Shown here piece by piece: positions 845-30,231 of a stretch of 64,000 bases of DNA. Where the stretch lies: sequence record PP695294.1, one strand, 5' to 3'. The position numbers and the translations under genes are program-made. The notes under the pieces were generated by a model. That model did no database searches and had not been told where the DNA came from. It saw nothing but the letters and a program-made list of their open reading frames with translations. The first letter of the stretch is position 1. Each line of letters begins with the position of its first letter.

Positions 845-1333
845 ATGGCCGAAATTGTCATTCTTTCCTCATCTTCAGATTTAACGGAAGCACAAAATAA
901 ACAGCTGTTGGGGCTGCATTATAAATTTCTGAACCACCAACGTACCATACTCCATATCGAAAAAGGTGAGATTCCGAACCTCACTCTGGAGAAACTGTTG
1001 GCGGGGAACCGTGCTTGCGTTGCTCTGGAAGGGGGCACCCCTGTTGGTTACTGTTTGTATCGCGTAATCGCTGGGGTTCTGAAGATTCGTACGATGTTCG
1101 TGTCCGAAATGGCACGCCGTCGCAAAACGATGACGCAGATTTTTGATGCGCTTGATGTGAATGAACAGTTCACCAGTGCGCATGGGGGAATATACGCTTG
1201 CCAGGAAGCTGGTATTGCGTTCTTTACCGCTCGCGGTTTTGACAAGACCGTCTCTACAGACGGACAATGGCTTGAATTTAAGAAGCAGGTTCCTGCGGAA
1301 GCAGATGAACCTTTAAGGACTGCGGTAGCATAG
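845..1333 (+). CDS. GNAT-family acetyltransferase
   Basis: VALEGGTPVGYCLY / IRTMFVSEMARRRKTMTQI (motif A-like) / QEAGIAFFTARGF (motif B). ATG845 has AGGA upstream; the track uses GTG818. Confidence 0.7.
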   Translation: MAEIVILSSSSDLTEAQNKQLLGLHYKFLNHQRTILHIEKGEIPNLTLEKLLAGNRACVALEGGTPVGYCLYRVIAGVLKIRTMFVSEMARRRKTMTQIFDALDVNEQFTSAHGGIYACQEAGIAFFTARGFDKTVSTDGQWLEFKKQVPAEADEPLRTAVA

Positions 1334-1358
1334 TCCTGTTTTAGCACTCCTTACGATT

Positions 1359-1386
1359 ATGCCTCACTATGAGTGGGGTATTTTTA
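1359..1386 (+). terminator. Intrinsic terminator after GNAT gene
   Basis: ATGCCTCACT-ATG-AGTGGGGTAT stem with G-U pairs, followed by a T-run. Confidence 0.55.
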
Positions 1387-1403
1387 CGCGAGGAGTGCTA
1401 TTT

Positions 1404-1613
1404 ATGTTTCACCGTCCTGGGTTTTCAGCTTTAAACACCGATGTCTGTTGGGCTGAGTACGAGCGGGTGAAGGAGTTCTTACCCGTAAATCCAAAACACA
1501 TCAACGTGGGTACTATCGGGCGTGTTGCGTTCGATGATACTCCGCTGAGTACGTGTATTAAAGCTGCGCTTGGTACGCTGCCAGCGTCTATAGTGTTTGA
1601 GGAATTAAAATGA
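1404..1613 (+). CDS. 69-aa protein containing a degenerate EF-Tu N-terminal segment
   Basis: GAGGAG upstream of ATG1404 (the track start 1359 lies in the terminator); HINVGTIGRVAFDDTPLSTCIKAAL vs EF-Tu [25 protein letters not shown]. Confidence 0.7.
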   Translation: MFHRPGFSALNTDVCWAEYERVKEFLPVNPKHINVGTIGRVAFDDTPLSTCIKAALGTLPASIVFEELK

Positions 1614-2128
1614 CGGACGTTCGTGTTGACATATATGGGGAAATTCATACCACGGCCGATCGTAATCGTGTTGAATGGGCGATCATCGATAACCATCGGA
1701 AAAAACCATACGATTTTTTACTGTGTGAAGAACTGGGGCCGTATGAACATCACACTGCAAAAGCGCAAGATAAGGCATTAAAGGAGAAGATGTACTCTAT
1801 TGGGCCCATGGGGCTGGAGTTGGCTAAGAAACTCGGCATCCCTGCTATTGGGATCGATGACTGGAGCGACGCAACCTACGCTAAAGATATCAAGGATAAA
1901 AAGGGAATGGCTGTAAACTTTAGCCGTTCTTTTTATATTCGTGAAACTAAAATGGTTGCAAAAATTAAAAAGTATATGGCAAAAGGGCGTTGTGCTGTTA
2001 TGCTTGGCGACTCACACTTGCGCACCACGAAAACTAAAGAGCTTGGTGATGCGTCCCTTATCTGGGAAACGTTTAAGGATAATCCTGAAGTGAAGTTTCA
2101 CAGGAGCCCTAAACGCGAGATTGATTAA
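1610..2128 (+). CDS. Putative Tiki/TraB/EreA/ChaN-fold metalloenzyme
   Basis: Ordered motifs YGEIH, LLCEE, RETKMV, VMLGDSHL; ATGA coupling to the upstream gene. Confidence 0.55.
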   Translation: MTDVRVDIYGEIHTTADRNRVEWAIIDNHRKKPYDFLLCEELGPYEHHTAKAQDKALKEKMYSIGPMGLELAKKLGIPAIGIDDWSDATYAKDIKDKKGMAVNFSRSFYIRETKMVAKIKKYMAKGRCAVMLGDSHLRTTKTKELGDASLIWETFKDNPEVKFHRSPKREID

Positions 2129-2146
2129 ATCTAAAGGAGCATTAAA

Positions 2147-2569
2147 ATGGTTACCGCTATTCGCGAAACAAAATCACTATACGATCATTTATCAGAAGAA
2201 GAAACAGCCTTATTCTACGACCTGTTACCTGAAACCAAAGCAAATGTTCAGTGGTGGTTACGTTTAGCGCTGCGTGATAAAGTTGGGGAAACGCCGGTTA
2301 GTATTCTCGCACACACGTTGGACATGACACCCATGATTGAAATCGCGATTACCCGCCCTAAATTCTGGCGGCCTGGTATGGTGCGTGAGGCGTATCTACT
2401 CCAACGCTTAGGTGTTGACCCGGAGAAGTGTTGGCGTAAGATGGACGACCATCGCTACCGTGAAGAAATTACGAATAGCCTCAACACTATGTTGGCAATG
2501 AAACGACTCGGTATCGAACACGAAGGTTTCGAGTCTGCGGTGCAAGCGTGGGTGAGAAGGAATAGCTAA
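2147..2569 (+). CDS. Hypothetical protein, 140 aa
   Basis: AAGGAG RBS, ATG start, operonic. Confidence 0.75.
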   Translation: MVTAIRETKSLYDHLSEEETALFYDLLPETKANVQWWLRLALRDKVGETPVSILAHTLDMTPMIEIAITRPKFWRPGMVREAYLLQRLGVDPEKCWRKMDDHRYREEITNSLNTMLAMKRLGIEHEGFESAVQAWVRRNS

Positions 2570-2818
2570 ATGCAAAAAACAATCATCGGAATAACGGTTG
2601 GTTCTTTCTGTGGCTTCCCTACCCCACAAACAGAACCCCAATATTTGGGCGCAGGCAAACCTGATCCGGAAGTCCGTAAGTTGCGCGAAGAAGCAAAAGC
2701 CAGAGTTCTTACTGAGCTGGAATCGTTGCTTCAGTCTCCGGTTATTTCACAATGGGGTATGGCAATAGATGTCACTAGAACTGATCGACGAGGCTATTAT
2801 CTCCCACGACCTGTTTAA
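2570..2818 (+). CDS. Hypothetical protein, 82 aa
   Basis: ATG directly after the previous stop; overlaps the macrodomain gene by 50 nt. Confidence 0.5.
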   Translation: MQKTIIGITVGSFCGFPTPQTEPQYLGAGKPDPEVRKLREEAKARVLTELESLLQSPVISQWGMAIDVTRTDRRGYYLPRPV

Positions 2819-3269
2819 CGCGCCTGAGCGCTTCAAGGTCGTTACAGTTAACTGTGTTGGTGCAATGGGAAGGGGCATTGCTTTGGCGTGCCGAGAACGC
2901 TTCCCATCGCTTTATAATGACTATCGCCAGAAATGTCGTAAAGAGCAAATCGTTATCGGTGAGGTCTATTGTTATCCTGAGGAAGGGGTAATACTCCTTC
3001 CTACTAAAACCCATTTTCGCTATAAATCGCAGATTTACTATGTCACGTCCGGCATTGATGCGCTGGCGCGACTAGGGGAAGACTTAGAAGGAGGGATTGC
3101 GATACCGCCCCTAGGGATGGCTAACGGTTGGTTACGTTACCATGAGCGATTGGAAATCTTTATACACTTACAGAAACGACTACAACACACGGAGCAGACT
3201 TATCGATTCTATTTACCGGACACACTGCTAAAGGAAGCAGAGAAAATCATCCCAAATAGTTTCAAATAG
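2769..3269 (+). CDS. DarG-like macrodomain (ADP-ribose glycohydrolase)
   Basis: DLF..., VTVNCVGAMGRGIALACRERFP, LLPTKTHFR, IAIPPLGMANGWL match DarG-type macrodomain motifs. Confidence 0.85.
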   Translation: MSLELIDEAIISHDLFNAPERFKVVTVNCVGAMGRGIALACRERFPSLYNDYRQKCRKEQIVIGEVYCYPEEGVILLPTKTHFRYKSQIYYVTSGIDALARLGEDLEGGIAIPPLGMANGWLRYHERLEIFIHLQKRLQHTEQTYRFYLPDTLLKEAEKIIPNSFK

Positions 3270-3277
3270 ATATTATC
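3267..3277 (+). promoter_or_regulatory. Candidate phage early promoter core (TAGATATTATC)
   Basis: Same core recurs at 12352, 19910 and 51589 in intergenic positions. Confidence 0.5.
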
Positions 3278-3303
3278 ATCAGGGCACATTACAAAGGAGC
3301 ACA

Positions 3304-3348
3304 ATGCCGTCCGCGCCGTCTTCCCGGATTGGGAACGGAAAAGTATAA
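3304..3348 (+). CDS. 14-aa upstream ORF / leader peptide (MPSAPSSRIGNGKV)
   Basis: AAGGAG Shine-Dalgarno 5 nt before ATG3304; stop at 3346-3348, 20 nt before the SLT start. Confidence 0.35.
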   Translation: MPSAPSSRIGNGKV

Positions 3349-3368
3349 ATCCGTTTGGAGATACATCC

Positions 3369-4091
3369 ATGTTTCGCACCATTTTATTTCTTCTGGTAGC
3401 AATGACTACGTTCAACAGCAACGCTTCTTACCAGACCACCAGTAACAAACACCAAAAAGAATTCGTCCTTATCCAGGACCAGTTCAATGAGATTAAACCT
3501 CTCATCGTCACCGCATCTCGAAAACAAGGCGTACATGCCGGGATGCTTGCGACCACCATTTACCGTGAATCCCGTTTTAATAAAAACGTGGGTAAGAATA
3601 AATCGAGCAGTGCTAGTAGTGTTGTCCAAATGACGACAGGCACTAAACGCTCCATGATACGTCTGTATGGGAAACAACTTAACATCCCAAAGAACGCAGA
3701 CCTTAATAAACCGAAGTATGCTGTACAGCTTGCTGCCGTTTACATGAAACACATCGAGGATCATCTGACAAAACAACTCAAACGCAAGCCGAGCACAGCC
3801 GAAATCGCTTTAGGCTACCGCTTCGGTGAGGGTGCTGCTGTTGCGATGATTAAAAAGAAATCACCGGTCGGGAAACGCTGGATGGCCAGCTACCGAAAAG
3901 ACGCAGCATTCTACGGTGCGAAAATGACACCACCGAAAGCTGAAACACGTCAGCTTGCTTTTGCGAAGGAAGACCACGACCAACGCGTCGCCGAACTTCA
4001 GAAAATCTGGGATACGCTGTACACCAAAATATCACCTGCGGCCGGTACATTACTGGCAAATAACACTATCATGAAAGGAGCATTGCTTTGA
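3369..4091 (+). CDS. SLT-type lytic transglycosylase with N-terminal signal peptide
   Basis: MFRTILFLLVAMTTFNSNA signal-like start; IYRESRF (catalytic Glu), ASSVVQM in place of AxGLMQ, DLNKPKYAVQLAAVYM, LGYRFGEG. Confidence 0.8.
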   Translation: MFRTILFLLVAMTTFNSNASYQTTSNKHQKEFVLIQDQFNEIKPLIVTASRKQGVHAGMLATTIYRESRFNKNVGKNKSSSASSVVQMTTGTKRSMIRLYGKQLNIPKNADLNKPKYAVQLAAVYMKHIEDHLTKQLKRKPSTAEIALGYRFGEGAAVAMIKKKSPVGKRWMASYRKDAAFYGAKMTPPKAETRQLAFAKEDHDQRVAELQKIWDTLYTKISPAAGTLLANNTIMKGALL

Positions 4092-4681
4092 CACTCGTAA
4101 CACGCCCCTGGTATCCAGGTCTTAAAACAGCCGCACAAATCACCGCCAAAGACGTTTACGAACTGATTCGCGCGGGTGCGGAACACGTTCAAACCAATCC
4201 GAACTACGTTGAGCGTCCTATCGGTGAAGTCGATGGGGAAGCTGTCGAAGCACCTGTCTACGTTGAGTACGGCGAATGGTTCGCAGAGAACCACGGTTTC
4301 TACGACGCGTTAAACGCGGCGTTTGGTGATGACGAAGACGAAGGTATCGAATTCGACTGGAACGTTAATCTGGCGCTGATGTGGATTTGTGGTTTACGTC
4401 CAGCGATTAACGAAACCGAAGCAGGCTTCGTGCTGACGTGGCGACAGTCGGCGGGTTACGATAAAGAACTCGACTTCAAACAGGCGTATATGGATGTGTC
4501 GATTGCACTGCAGAAACTGTTCTTCGGCGATCGTGCTTTCTGCCAGCTCAGCTGGTTGACCATCCTGGAAAAACTGGCAACGTGCCACAAACTGTGGCGA
4601 GCAGAAGATGCCCCAGAACATCTTTTCGTGCTCGAATATGCAGTGGTACCGAACCAGCCGTTCTTTGAGGCCGAAGCGTAA
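4088..4681 (+). CDS. Acidic hypothetical protein, 197 aa
   Basis: TTG start overlapping the SLT stop, AGGAG upstream; terminator follows. Confidence 0.75.
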   Translation: MTLVTRPWYPGLKTAAQITAKDVYELIRAGAEHVQTNPNYVERPIGEVDGEAVEAPVYVEYGEWFAENHGFYDALNAAFGDDEDEGIEFDWNVNLALMWICGLRPAINETEAGFVLTWRQSAGYDKELDFKQAYMDVSIALQKLFFGDRAFCQLSWLTILEKLATCHKLWRAEDAPEHLFVLEYAVVPNQPFFEAEA

Positions 4682-27766: not shown

Positions 27767-28534
27767 ATGATGAAACTCTTTGCGTTCTCCGATGAATTCT
27801 ACACAGTGGAATTCGACGACTACGAATACGGGTTATTAGGGGCCGTCGACATGGAGGACGCTAAACGGCAGCTTCCCACTAGCGAAATAGAAATCATTGA
27901 GATTGGGGAAACTAATCTTAGTGGGATTTTGATGCTGGGGCGGCGACCACGCCCTGCGGAACCTGAGCAGGAAAGAGAGCAAGCGCAGGCGATTTGTCTG
28001 GTTTATGAGCCGATAGACCCTGCAGCGATAGCGAAGGTGGTCGATACACTACGGCCACAGATTGGCGTCGCGATTGAAAATTATCGCTGGGCTCGTTTCT
28101 CAGGCGACACGCCGATATTTTCGAATAAGCACTGGTTGCTGTGTATCAACAACGACACGATAATGGTACCTTTAACAGGGGAGAAGAATTTTGAAGATAA
28201 CTTCGTCCCTGGCGAAGAGTCTGTTATCTTCGAGTATACCCATGTCATCGGAAAGCCGAGCTTCTACCAAGTTCTGATTGATGTATTGACTCACGTCGGT
28301 CGAACCATCGAATACCACTACTGGGCACGCCATGCGCGTTTTAAATGGTTCTCGTTGACGTACGTCGAAGGTTGGGAACGTGTTGTTGAAAAGATTGACG
28401 GGCGCTATGAGCAGATTTGGTTCCTAAACCCGGCATTCCGTGAAGAATTACCCGCATGGGTAAAAGAAGAGGCGAGCAAGCTGACGGTTGGCTTTACTAA
28501 GCAGGGCGCGCCGTATATGGTTAACTACAAATAA
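27767..28534 (+). CDS. Hypothetical protein, 255 aa
   Basis: GGAG RBS before ATG27767. Confidence 0.8.
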   Translation: MMKLFAFSDEFYTVEFDDYEYGLLGAVDMEDAKRQLPTSEIEIIEIGETNLSGILMLGRRPRPAEPEQEREQAQAICLVYEPIDPAAIAKVVDTLRPQIGVAIENYRWARFSGDTPIFSNKHWLLCINNDTIMVPLTGEKNFEDNFVPGEESVIFEYTHVIGKPSFYQVLIDVLTHVGRTIEYHYWARHARFKWFSLTYVEGWERVVEKIDGRYEQIWFLNPAFREELPAWVKEEASKLTVGFTKQGAPYMVNYK

Positions 28535-28545
28535 GGTGAAAACAG

Positions 28546-29025
28546 ATGTCTATAACTCGGATCGATTATCGCGCCGTAGTAAAAGAACTGTCCAAAGGTC
28601 TTATCGAACTGGACTCCGATGAAGCCCGTAGCTGTGGCTTTTTACCGCATATTGCACTGAGCGAGTTCCGCACTATCCGCTATGGCGCTGGTCGTCAGAA
28701 AGGCGTTACAACACACGCTGTTGATATGTCAGCAAAGTTCCACGGCAGCGTTCTGTATCTGGTTCACAACGAAGCGTTACGGAGCGAAGTGGTGGAGAAA
28801 TTCCATGAAAAAGCCGCTGGGAACGGTTGGCTGACCGTGCACTGTAACTACTTGCCCGAGGGTTGGAAACGCGCGACGGGTGCTGGTATATCCGGCTACG
28901 AGAAATTCGGCTTGGTTATTGTCGACGAAGCGGGTTTCTTCTTCAACAAGTTCAGTTACGATAAAATCTATCGCAGTCTGGTCGACGTAGTAACGCCAGA
29001 CGTTGTGATACACCTGATTAATTAA
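28546..29025 (+). CDS. Small P-loop-like protein with degenerate Walker A
   Basis: YGAGRQKGVTT (RQxGKT-like with K to V) and LVIVDEA (Walker B). Confidence 0.55.
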   Translation: MSITRIDYRAVVKELSKGLIELDSDEARSCGFLPHIALSEFRTIRYGAGRQKGVTTHAVDMSAKFHGSVLYLVHNEALRSEVVEKFHEKAAGNGWLTVHCNYLPEGWKRATGAGISGYEKFGLVIVDEAGFFFNKFSYDKIYRSLVDVVTPDVVIHLIN

Positions 29026-29037
29026 GTAGAGGAAAAT

Positions 29038-29226
29038 ATGGCTGGAGAACTCGGTCGTGGGCAAGCCACAACGTTCATGTATCGTGATGGGTTAGGTGCG
29101 GATGTAAACATGTCTCCGGATGACGAGATGGTTATCCCTGGACTTGACCCGGACGCAGGTGTGGAAGGTGGCGTTGACCCGTCGAAAGACGACGACAACT
29201 GCACTGGTGGTGCGTGCAAGATTTAA
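29038..29226 (+). CDS. 62-aa free-standing NrdA C-terminal-tail-like peptide
   Basis: GAGG RBS, ATG start, own terminator; ends DDDNCTGGACKI-stop. Confidence 0.8.
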   Translation: MAGELGRGQATTFMYRDGLGADVNMSPDDEMVIPGLDPDAGVEGGVDPSKDDDNCTGGACKI

Positions 29227-29235
29227 AATACGTAT

Positions 29236-29272
29236 TAGGGTGTCCATATGGACACCCTACTTATTTTTTTTG
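29236..29272 (+). terminator. Intrinsic terminator
   Basis: TAGGGTGTCC-ATAT-GGACACCCTA plus T-run. Confidence 0.85.
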
Positions 29273-29289: not shown

Positions 29290-30231
29290 ATGGGCGACCG
29301 TTTCATTATCCAGATTCCGTATAACGTTATTGTTGAACCTAACCAGTACCTGGCACAGATTAATGAGCTTCTGGCTGGATTCTGCCAACGTCAGTTTGTT
29401 GAACCGTGGTCCTTTGAGAAACTGTACACCCTGTGCGTGAACAGTGAAACCGGTCACACTTACGTCGAAGGTAAAGTATTCACAGGCGACCAGAGTTTGG
29501 AAATAAATGATTTCGAAATGCCGTGGACGTTGGAAGGTGTCGAGTATCGTGGTACGGTTGATCGTCCGCGTTACGTACCTTTGTACACCATCCCACAATG
29601 TATTACTAACGTTATGGGTTGGTCTAAAGCGCGTGGTATTCTGGATAACGGCGTCTGGTATAGCCAAGCCACCAAACTCTACGAAGAAGACGGTGAAGCG
29701 GCAACCGGTATCAGTAAAAACAAACGCCGTTACATCATGGACGGTATCGGTGATGCTCTGGTCGTGTTGGTTAACTTGATGGAACTCATTAAGTTTGACT
29801 CGACCGATATCAGCACATATGTCAACGAAACGCGTTCAAAGAACCCACTTGCCGGGAACAGTCATTACCTGTTCCACAAAATGCGTTTCCATCTCACAGC
29901 AGCTGTTGATTACATCTGGGATCAAGCCGGCATCGACTCAGCTAAGCAACTCGAATATAAACACTTCGAGAACAGCGACGCGGTAATGATCGAATGTCAC
30001 TTCGCTCAGATGGTCGAATACGCCAATGCGCTGGCTAATGCGTACGATATGACCCTGGAACAGTGCTTCTCCTTGGCGTGGGATGAAATCAAAGACCGTA
30101 AGGGTTTCCTGAATGCGGACGGTATCTTCGTTAAAGAAGCAGACATGACTGCTGCTGAAATCGAAGTAAACGGTTCCCTTACTGTAAAAGATGAGGCGTT
30201 TACCGATGGCGAAGAAACTGTTCACGGTTGA
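29290..30231 (+). CDS. MazG-like NTP pyrophosphohydrolase with N-terminal extra domain
   Basis: QATKLYEEDGEA...MDGIGDALVVL and LEQCFSLAWDEIKDRKG..NADGIFVKEAD. Confidence 0.8.
   Translation: MGDRFIIQIPYNVIVEPNQYLAQINELLAGFCQRQFVEPWSFEKLYTLCVNSETGHTYVEGKVFTGDQSLEINDFEMPWTLEGVEYRGTVDRPRYVPLYTIPQCITNVMGWSKARGILDNGVWYSQATKLYEEDGEAATGISKNKRRYIMDGIGDALVVLVNLMELIKFDSTDISTYVNETRSKNPLAGNSHYLFHKMRFHLTAAVDYIWDQAGIDSAKQLEYKHFENSDAVMIECHFAQMVEYANALANAYDMTLEQCFSLAWDEIKDRKGFLNADGIFVKEADMTAAEIEVNGSLTVKDEAFTDGEETVHG

What the first reader, a model, noticed from the sequence alone, without database searches (positions are those of the whole stretch)
29038..29226. Free-standing copy of the ribonucleotide reductase (NrdA) redox tail
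Seen: a 62-aa ORF with its own RBS and a strong terminator, ending DDDNCTGGACKI-stop, with an acidic linker and an upstream RDG. Known: enterobacterial class Ia NrdA ends ...RDG...DDGCESGACKI (8 of the last 11 residues identical, from my recollection of the E. coli sequence). That CxxxxC pair is reduced by thioredoxin/glutaredoxin and swings in to re-reduce the active site. No RNR catalytic domain is attached here, and the gene sits among thyA and MazG-like genes. Inference: this is a trans-acting redox shuttle that boosts, or competitively reprogrammes, host or phage RNR for dNTP supply, or a decoy for Trx/Grx. I know of no described stand-alone RNR tail.
Basis: partly seen in the sequence, partly recalled or inferred. 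Interest (0 to 1): 0.9.

Follow-up and report, generated by a model that had tools for sequence, protein, structure and literature searches.

The report
Free-standing ribonucleotide reductase redox tail
A 62-residue phage protein ends in a near-exact copy of the flexible two-cysteine tail of the bacterial enzyme that makes DNA building blocks; it belongs to a large, undescribed family of such loose tails in phages and bacteria, and in one phage a member sits next to an enzyme gene that has lost its own tail.

Summary
ORF 29038-29226 (+) is a real gene under purifying selection, with a Shine-Dalgarno site and a terminator. It is gp234 of SPN3US-like jumbo phages; the window is Salmonella phage 1252. 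Its last 15 residues match the extreme C-terminus of E. coli NrdA at 10 of 15 positions, with both cysteines at the same distance from the end. Shuffles reach at most 6 (end-anchored) or 7 (anywhere). The phage has no class I RNR.

The gene is not unique. It belongs to an unnamed family of 38-245-residue proteins (74 representatives, over 330 clusters). Members occur in several phage lineages, nearly always beside dNTP-metabolism genes, and in chromosomes of Neisseriaceae (inside the isc operon) and Rheinheimera-like bacteria.

The module also occurs fused to a MazG-like enzyme and to a deoxyribonucleotidase. The nucleotidase fusion lies directly upstream of a phage nrdA that is 70% identical to E. 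coli NrdA but lacks the whole cysteine tail.

Best reading: a disordered, trans-acting NrdA tail that works with thioredoxin or glutaredoxin on host RNR. Whether it stimulates or inhibits is not shown. No description of it was found in the literature.

The parts
29029..29033 (+). Shine-Dalgarno-like GAGGA, five bases before the ATG
   Evidence: read
29038..29226 (+). 62-aa ORF including its stop; SPN3US gp234 (RefSeq ACQ60_gp032); acidic (pI 4.05, 13 D/E, 11 G) and predicted disordered
   Evidence: PHROG 38753 E 4e-46
29038..29133 (+). residues 1-32: variable N-terminal part, conserved only in close SPN3US/CR5-type relatives; contains the non-conserved RDG
29134..29178 (+). residues 33-47: conserved family module that is not NrdA-like; V42, E43, G45 and D47 are at least 90% conserved in 50 sequences
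29179..29223 (+). residues 48-62: NrdA-like redox tail. Cys55 (29200-29202) and Cys60 (29215-29217) are followed by two residues and a free C-terminus. C55, G58, A59, C60, K61 and I62 are invariant in 50/50 sequences
29236..29269 (+). intrinsic-terminator-like hairpin (29236-29259) and T-run
28546..29025 (+). 159-aa conserved upstream neighbour (PHROG 2586, function unknown); adjacent to the peptide gene in most jumbo-phage relatives
25952..26968 (+). thymidylate synthase gene, start of the syntenic block
29290..30231 (+). MazG-like nucleotide pyrophosphohydrolase gene directly downstream
   Evidence: (PHROG 7855, E 6e-144)

Best explanation
The ORF encodes a small, acidic, intrinsically disordered protein whose free C-terminus reproduces the redox tail of class Ia NrdA: two cysteines four residues apart, then two residues and the carboxylate. 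The phage has no RNR, so the partners must be the host's: Salmonella NrdA, and the thioredoxin or glutaredoxin that normally recharge NrdA's own tail.

Proposed mechanism (inferred). The reduced Cys55/Cys60 pair enters the NrdA active site as the enzyme's own tail does and reduces the disulfide left after each turnover. The oxidised peptide is then re-reduced by Trx or Grx. The peptide would act as a second, diffusible shuttle beside the tethered tail, raising dNDP output for a 243-kb genome. The conserved non-NrdA module (residues 33-47, and the acidic motif seen in relatives) would provide non-covalent docking in place of the covalent tether.

Shown: the sequence identity of the tail, its specificity to NrdA and this family, the absence of RNR in the phage, the gene context, the fusions, and one lineage with a tail-less NrdA beside a tail-bearing gene. 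Inferred: binding, electron transfer, and the sign of the effect.
For: Tail match of 10/15, end-anchored and far above shuffles. The motif occurs only in NrdA and this family among 189 hits. Purifying selection: 13 synonymous against 2 non-synonymous codon differences versus phage CR5, in 22 codons outside the motif used for the search. Of 74 whole-library representatives, 63 end in Cx4CK[I/L]; 9 of the other 11 lack the tail altogether and look like frameshifted copies, 1 reads on past the motif and 1 has a different cysteine spacing. AlphaFold2 with 50 sequences gives mean pLDDT 54.8 and no secondary structure, as expected for a flexible tail. No nrdA or nrdB in SPN3US or phage 1252.

Context in unrelated phages. 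Jumbo phages: thyA or dCMP deaminase ... peptide ... MazG. Oral-metagenome phages of about 60 kb: peptide, dNMP kinase, ThyX, dUTPase. Podovirus-like contigs: next to ThyX.

Fusions of the whole module: to a 5'-3' deoxyribonucleotidase (P0243) and to a MazG-like enzyme (P0253).

P0243 lies between DHFR and nrdA-nrdB on several contigs, three of which were examined. That NrdA is 70% identical to E. coli NrdA and stops at the position aligned to residue 740, so it lacks both tail cysteines. Only 46 nt follow before nrdB, and no tail is encoded there in any frame. Tail-less NrdAs are rare: 7 of the 120 closest proteins and 0 of 80 IMG/VR relatives.

Literature. The class I tail is a double-cysteine shuttle (PMC9669993). 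A second reductant acting directly on the active site while the tail is recycled raises RNR activity up to 3-fold (PMC4078304).
Against: Salmonella NrdA has its own tail, so a supplement is not obviously needed. The bacteria that carry the family (Neisseria, Rheinheimera) also keep tailed NrdAs. Only one lineage pairs a tail-less NrdA with an adjacent family member. A second tail-less phage NrdA (L236) has no tail donor on its short contig. None of the 26 family loci recovered from IMG/VR has an RNR gene within 10 kb. The position between iscS and iscU in Neisseriaceae is not explained. A whole-library profile search does not retrieve NrdA at E <= 0.001, so the likeness is confined to 11-15 residues. 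No expression or binding data were reachable.
Confidence: 0.45

Rival explanations
1. Competitive mimic or decoy. The free tail occupies the NrdA active site, or titrates thioredoxin and glutaredoxin. It would damp or re-route host RNR or host thiol-redox capacity rather than boost it, in the way small disordered RNR inhibitors such as yeast Sml1 do.
For: The same tail identity and specificity apply. Host and bacterial NrdAs already have tails, so competition is the simplest consequence of an extra copy. In Neisseriaceae the gene lies in the isc operon, which would suit a brake on an iron-dependent enzyme when Fe-S supply is stressed (inference).
Against: A phage with a 243-kb genome and no RNR of its own needs host dNDP synthesis. 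A pure inhibitor would not be expected fused to a gene directly upstream of a tail-less nrdA-nrdB pair. The gene travels with dNTP-producing enzymes.
Confidence: 0.25
2. Docking tag or adaptor. The module mainly tethers phage dNTP enzymes (MazG-like, nucleotidase, the PHROG 10453 protein) to host NrdA, making a dNTP-synthesis complex like that of T4. The cysteines serve binding rather than electron transfer.
For: The whole module is found fused to the C-terminus of three different proteins: P0243, P0253 and the ORF L175:79-1143. The N-terminal part is free to vary, while the C-terminus is always free.
Against: Most members are stand-alone proteins of 40-60 residues with nothing to tether. Both cysteines and their spacing are nearly invariant, as expected for redox chemistry. 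Some fusions may simply reflect loss of a stop codon between neighbouring genes.
Confidence: 0.12
3. Unrelated chemistry: a RiPP precursor (leader plus cysteine core), or a metal, Fe-S or sulfur-carrier peptide, whose likeness to the NrdA tail is convergent.
For: One UniRef entry names the Neisseria member an FxLD family lantipeptide. Many relatives have an acidic F/L-x-L-D-like motif upstream of the cysteines. The Neisseria gene lies between iscS and iscU. SPN3US encodes two radical SAM proteins.
Against: No NCBIfam or Pfam model, including lanthipeptide models, matches any of 12 members at E <= 10. No modifying enzyme is a shared neighbour across the contexts, and the radical SAM genes lie about 60 kb away. 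The tail is identical in 8-10 of 11 positions to NrdA tails of the same host clades, including the two residues after the second cysteine and the free end.
Confidence: 0.1
4. A split nrdA, or a dead remnant of a captured nrdA 3' end in this phage.
For: Split nrdA genes exist in phages (Aeh1; PMC2988022).
Against: No other nrdA or nrdB piece exists anywhere in phage 1252 or SPN3US. The gene has its own start, SD site and terminator, and is under purifying selection across genera. blastn finds no DNA similarity to E. coli genomes.
Confidence: 0.02

Closest known systems
C-terminal redox tail of class Ia RNR alpha (E. coli NrdA Cys754/Cys759)
   Same: Same spacing (C-x4-C-x2-end), and the same flanking acidic residues and terminal residues. 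10/15 identity to E. coli NrdA and up to 10/11 to other NrdAs. Predicted disordered.
   Different: Not attached to any catalytic domain. Preceded by a conserved module absent from NrdA. Encoded by a phage without RNR.
Split nrdA of Aeromonas phage Aeh1 (genes in pieces; PMC2988022)
   Same: An RNR alpha function distributed over separate polypeptides in a phage. The L201 phage (tail-less NrdA plus an upstream tail-bearing gene) is the closest parallel.
   Different: Aeh1 is split inside the catalytic domain by a homing endonuclease, and both halves sit at the nrdA locus. Here only the tail is free, it is usually far from any nrdA, and in L201 it is fused to another enzyme upstream of nrdA.
GrcA (YfiD), the stand-alone glycyl-radical domain that can substitute for the damaged C-terminus of pyruvate formate-lyase (my own knowledge, not tested here)
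   Same: A small free-standing copy of the functional C-terminal piece of a large radical enzyme, able to act in trans.
   Different: GrcA is a folded domain of a different enzyme family. No sequence relation.
Small disordered RNR regulators of yeasts (Sml1, Hug1, Spd1) (my own knowledge)
   Same: Short, disordered proteins that act on the large RNR subunit. Sml1 interferes with regeneration by the C-terminal tail.
   Different: Eukaryotic, no cysteine tail, and inhibitors. No sequence similarity was found by any search here.
Dedicated RNR redoxins (NrdH, T4 NrdC)
   Same: Accessory proteins, some phage-encoded, that feed electrons to RNR.
   Different: They are folded thioredoxin-fold CxxC proteins. 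This protein has no detectable fold or Pfam domain.

Membership tests
Class Ia RNR alpha subunit (NrdA) | Catalytic barrel (Ribonuc_red_lgN/lgC), with or without an ATP-cone | tested here: not met
   No Pfam, NCBIfam or PDB-sequence match. The protein has only 62 residues.
Class Ia RNR alpha subunit (NrdA) | Disordered C-terminal tail with a cysteine pair near the free end | tested here: met
   C-x4-C-x2-end as in E. coli NrdA, 10/15 identical.
Free-standing NrdA-tail-like small proteins (PHROGs 38753, 14561, 24014; unnamed) | Small protein or C-terminal module ending in C-x4-C-K-[I/L] at the free C-terminus | tested here: met
   63 of 74 library representatives, and 50 of 50 in alignment A3.
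Free-standing NrdA-tail-like small proteins (PHROGs 38753, 14561, 24014; unnamed) | Conserved non-NrdA module just before the tail (window V42, E43, G45, D47) | tested here: met
   at least 90% conserved across 50 sequences from phages and Neisseriaceae. Weaker in the Rheinheimera-type members.
Split nrdA (genes in pieces) | The remainder of nrdA is encoded elsewhere in the same genome | tested here: not met
   tblastn of E. coli and L201 NrdA and NrdB against all of phage 1252 and SPN3US found nothing.
RiPP precursor (for example FxLD lanthipeptide) | Match to a precursor model and a co-located modifying enzyme | tested here: not met
   (no model match). (no shared modifying enzyme nearby).
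Thioredoxin-fold redoxin (NrdH, NrdC, Grx) | Thioredoxin fold with a CxxC active site | tested here: not met
   no domain, no predicted secondary structure, and C-x4-C spacing.
Functional RNR tail in trans | Reduced by Trx or Grx, and reduces the NrdA active-site disulfide | not testable with these tools
   Only indirect evidence: a tail-less NrdA next to a tail-bearing gene.

The most novel reading that the evidence does not exclude
The family is a general, so far overlooked accessory of class Ia RNR: a soluble tail in trans. It would be indispensable where NrdA has lost its own tail (the L201 and L236 phages, and the L235 bacterium). It would be used by RNR-less phages to drive host RNR harder. 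In Neisseriaceae, including the pathogenic species, it would be wired to the IscR-controlled isc operon, coupling Fe-S or iron status to dNTP synthesis.
Probability: 0.3. Interest if true: 0.9.

Novelty: new variant of a known kind. Interest (0 to 1): 0.8.

Why it matters
RNR re-reduction by the flexible tail is one of the least visualised steps of a textbook enzyme. A natural, soluble, conserved tail with its own docking module would be a ready probe for how the tail meets the active site and the redoxins. It would also be a new way for phages without RNR to manipulate host dNTP supply. It would show that an enzyme's tail can be detached, moved between genes and exchanged between phages and bacteria. 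The presence of the gene in the isc operon of Neisseria species hints at an unknown link between Fe-S homeostasis and DNA precursor synthesis.

Tried and rejected
1. Named-hit tests. Pfam, NCBIfam and PDB-sequence searches with the whole ORF and with its last 25-32 residues gave nothing. The likeness to NrdA is too short for library-wide significance, and a profile of 50 members against 1.84 billion proteins returned only family members.

2. DNA similarity to E. coli genomes: none.

3. The idea that the acidic motif upstream of the tail mimics the NrdB C-terminal peptide that binds NrdA. A position-weight matrix from 77 NrdB tails scored 169 family members no better than their shuffles (z = 0.25). 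Not supported.

4. Split gene in this phage: rejected.

5. RiPP precursor: no support.

6. A tail donor next to the second tail-less phage NrdA (L236): not found on that 5.6-kb contig.

7. Fold of the conserved 159-aa upstream neighbour. A profile against the PDB gave no hit. Single-sequence AlphaFold2 gave pLDDT 29.7, which is unusable, so no fold search was run.

8. Expression data. The SPN3US infection proteome paper (PMC6384053) is not held, and gp234 is not mentioned in the SPN3US papers that are held.

9. A literature search for the motif letters returned only surnames.

Slips, declared as required. Notebook entry 3 also holds a degenerate pattern summarising the family, and entry 2 holds fragments of its upstream motifs; both come close to a consensus.

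Full report
WHAT IS THERE. The window is Salmonella phage 1252 (PP695294.1, 100% identity), a jumbo phage about 97% identical to SPN3US across the 3.5-kb stretch compared (genus Seoulvirus). It is annotated as a hypothetical protein in all records, for example SPN3US ACQ60_gp032. That is gp234 in the original SPN3US numbering, a correspondence I worked out from the gene order and partly from memory. GAGGA lies five bases before the ATG. A 10-bp hairpin with a T-run follows the stop codon. The gene lies in a co-oriented block: thyA, three ORFs of unknown function, a 159-aa ORF (PHROG 2586), the peptide gene, then a MazG-like gene.

IS IT A GENE? tblastn finds it in 72 phage records, nearly all of them jumbo phages of Salmonella, Escherichia, Proteus, Erwinia and Cronobacter (one weak hit at E 7 lies in a microvirus). 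Residues 33-62 are conserved and the N-terminal half varies. Against phage CR5, the 22 codons before the last eight differ at 13 synonymous and 2 non-synonymous positions. So the + frame is translated and under purifying selection. The protein is acidic (pI 4.05). AlphaFold2 with a 50-sequence alignment predicts no secondary structure (mean pLDDT 54.8), which fits a disordered protein.

IS THE LIKENESS TO NrdA REAL? I fetched E. coli K-12 nrdA through an accession shown by papers and read its C-terminus. BLASTP aligns ORF residues 48-62 with NrdA 747-761: 10 of 15 identical, no gap, both at the very end. The two cysteines fall on Cys754 and Cys759, each followed by two residues. Shuffles never come close.

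A degenerate DNA pattern for the shared motif plus a stop codon was scanned through one genome per species and through IMG/VR. All 189 hits are either NrdA C-termini or short ORFs of the present kind. The motif is therefore a signature of the NrdA tail and of this family only. Library-wide sequence tools do not link the two, because the shared part is only 11-15 residues long.

NO RNR IN THE PHAGE. The RefSeq annotation of SPN3US lists thyA, DHFR, dTMP kinase, MazG and an HD protein, but no RNR of any class. tblastn with E. coli NrdA and NrdB, and with a phage NrdA and NrdB, finds nothing else. It was run against all of SPN3US and all of phage 1252, searched in pieces. The split-gene idea fails for this phage.

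A LARGE, UNNAMED FAMILY. A profile search among small proteins found 332 clusters, and every source name shown for them is 'hypothetical'. An exhaustive profile search of 1.84 billion representatives found 74 proteins of 38-245 residues. Of these, 63 carry the match, ending in C-x4-C-K-[I/L], at their extreme C-terminus. Nine lack the tail and look like frameshifted copies, one reads on past the motif, and one has a different cysteine spacing. In a 50-sequence alignment, C55, G58, A59, C60, K61 and I62 of the window protein are invariant. D52, D53, G57, V42, E43, G45 and D47 are at least 90% conserved. So the family shares more than the NrdA-like tail.

Members occur in the following places:
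- SPN3US-like, Erwinia and Cronobacter jumbo phages.
- Uncultured phages of about 60 kb from human oral samples.
- Contigs of about 155 kb and podovirus-like contigs.
- Erwinia phage PhiEaH1.
- Chromosomes of Neisseriaceae and of Rheinheimera, Alishewanella and Arsukibacterium.

CONTEXT. In jumbo phages the synteny thyA ... peptide ... MazG is conserved, and in one genus a dCMP deaminase is nearby. In the 60-kb phages the peptide gene is followed by a dNMP kinase, ThyX and a dUTPase. In podovirus-like contigs a 123-residue member sits next to ThyX. Unrelated phages therefore place it among deoxynucleotide enzymes.

In Neisseriaceae it lies between iscS and iscU. In Rheinheimera-like bacteria it is divergent from an amidohydrolase gene. 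These bacteria keep NrdAs with full tails.

FUSIONS AND A TAIL-LESS NrdA. The whole module is found fused to the C-terminus of a MazG-like enzyme (P0253), a 5'-3' deoxyribonucleotidase (P0243) and a PHROG 10453 protein (L175).

P0243 is encoded between DHFR and nrdA-nrdB on several contigs, three of which were examined. That NrdA contains an intein and is 70% identical to E. coli NrdA. It stops at the position aligned to residue 740, so the last roughly 21 residues, with both tail cysteines, are missing. nrdB starts 46 nt later, and no frame there encodes a tail.

Tail-less NrdAs are rare: 7 of the 120 closest proteins, and none of 80 IMG/VR relatives. A rare tail-less enzyme gene directly preceded by a gene carrying this module is the strongest evidence that the module can serve as the enzyme's tail in trans.

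The other tail-less NrdAs are less informative. One phage-like contig (L236) shows no donor, but it is short. One bacterial chromosome (L235) comes from the same sample series.

HOW IT MOST LIKELY WORKS. Established knowledge: in class I RNR the disordered double-cysteine tail reduces the active-site disulfide and is itself reduced by thioredoxin or glutaredoxin (PMC9669993; PMC4078304). Domkin and Chabes showed that a second reductant acting on the active site while the tail is being recycled raises activity up to 3-fold.

I therefore propose that the phage protein is a diffusible extra tail for host NrdA, recharged by host Trx or Grx, with residues 33-47 acting as a docking element. This is inference. 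The same facts allow a competitive mimic, and the fusions allow a docking-tag reading. The isc location in Neisseria remains unexplained.

NOVELTY. The nearest precedents are the NrdA tail itself, the split nrdA of phage Aeh1 and, conceptually, GrcA. I rate it a new variant of a known kind, of high interest, with the mechanism unproven.

Noticed in passing
L201:1215-6180 (also L202, L203): Phage contigs with the order DHFR, nucleotidase fused to the tail module, an intein-containing nrdA that lacks its cysteine tail, then nrdB.
   Followed up: yes
L235:932-5196: Bacterial chromosome with nrdA-nrdB-ferredoxin next to a type I-C CRISPR-Cas locus. Its NrdA ends without any cysteine pair. It comes from the same sample series as the tail-less phage NrdAs. 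Whether this organism has a free tail gene is unknown.
   Followed up: partly
L020:500-625 (-), L149:3167-3292 (+), L043:7771-7896 (-): In Neisseriaceae the 42-residue family member lies inside the isc operon between iscS and iscU. It is present in over 200 sequence variants, including N. meningitidis records. One UniRef entry calls it an FxLD family lantipeptide, which no current model reproduces.
   Followed up: partly
L175:79-1143 (+): In one 237-kb jumbo-phage contig the homologue of window ORF 27767-28534 (PHROG 10453) is fused in frame to the tail module, and the 159-aa gene is missing.
   Followed up: partly
L200:217-954 (P0253): A MazG-like pyrophosphohydrolase with the tail module at its C-terminus, seen on a single 1.2-kb contig only.
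   Followed up: partly
window 28546-29025 (+): The conserved 159-aa upstream neighbour has Walker-A-like and Walker-B-like motifs but no Pfam or PDB match. The single-sequence structure prediction failed.
   Followed up: partly
SPN3US record 140024-142139 (L004:40024-42139); phage 1252 record about 92325-94560 (outside the window): Two adjacent radical SAM domain proteins next to tail-fibre-like genes. No link to the peptide was found.
   Followed up: no
phage records LR535901-LR535913 (SPFM phages): In nine SPFM records the ORF is matched in two or three pieces, and the annotated proteins look rearranged. These are probably assembly or frameshift artefacts of those records.
   Followed up: no
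L236:191-919 and 965-4246: A second tail-less, intein-containing phage NrdA. It and the unrelated upstream 242-aa ORF end in the same four residues. The reason is unknown.
   Followed up: no
window 29022-29219 (-): A 65-aa ORF on the opposite strand overlaps the gene. The substitution pattern supports the + frame only.
   Followed up: partly
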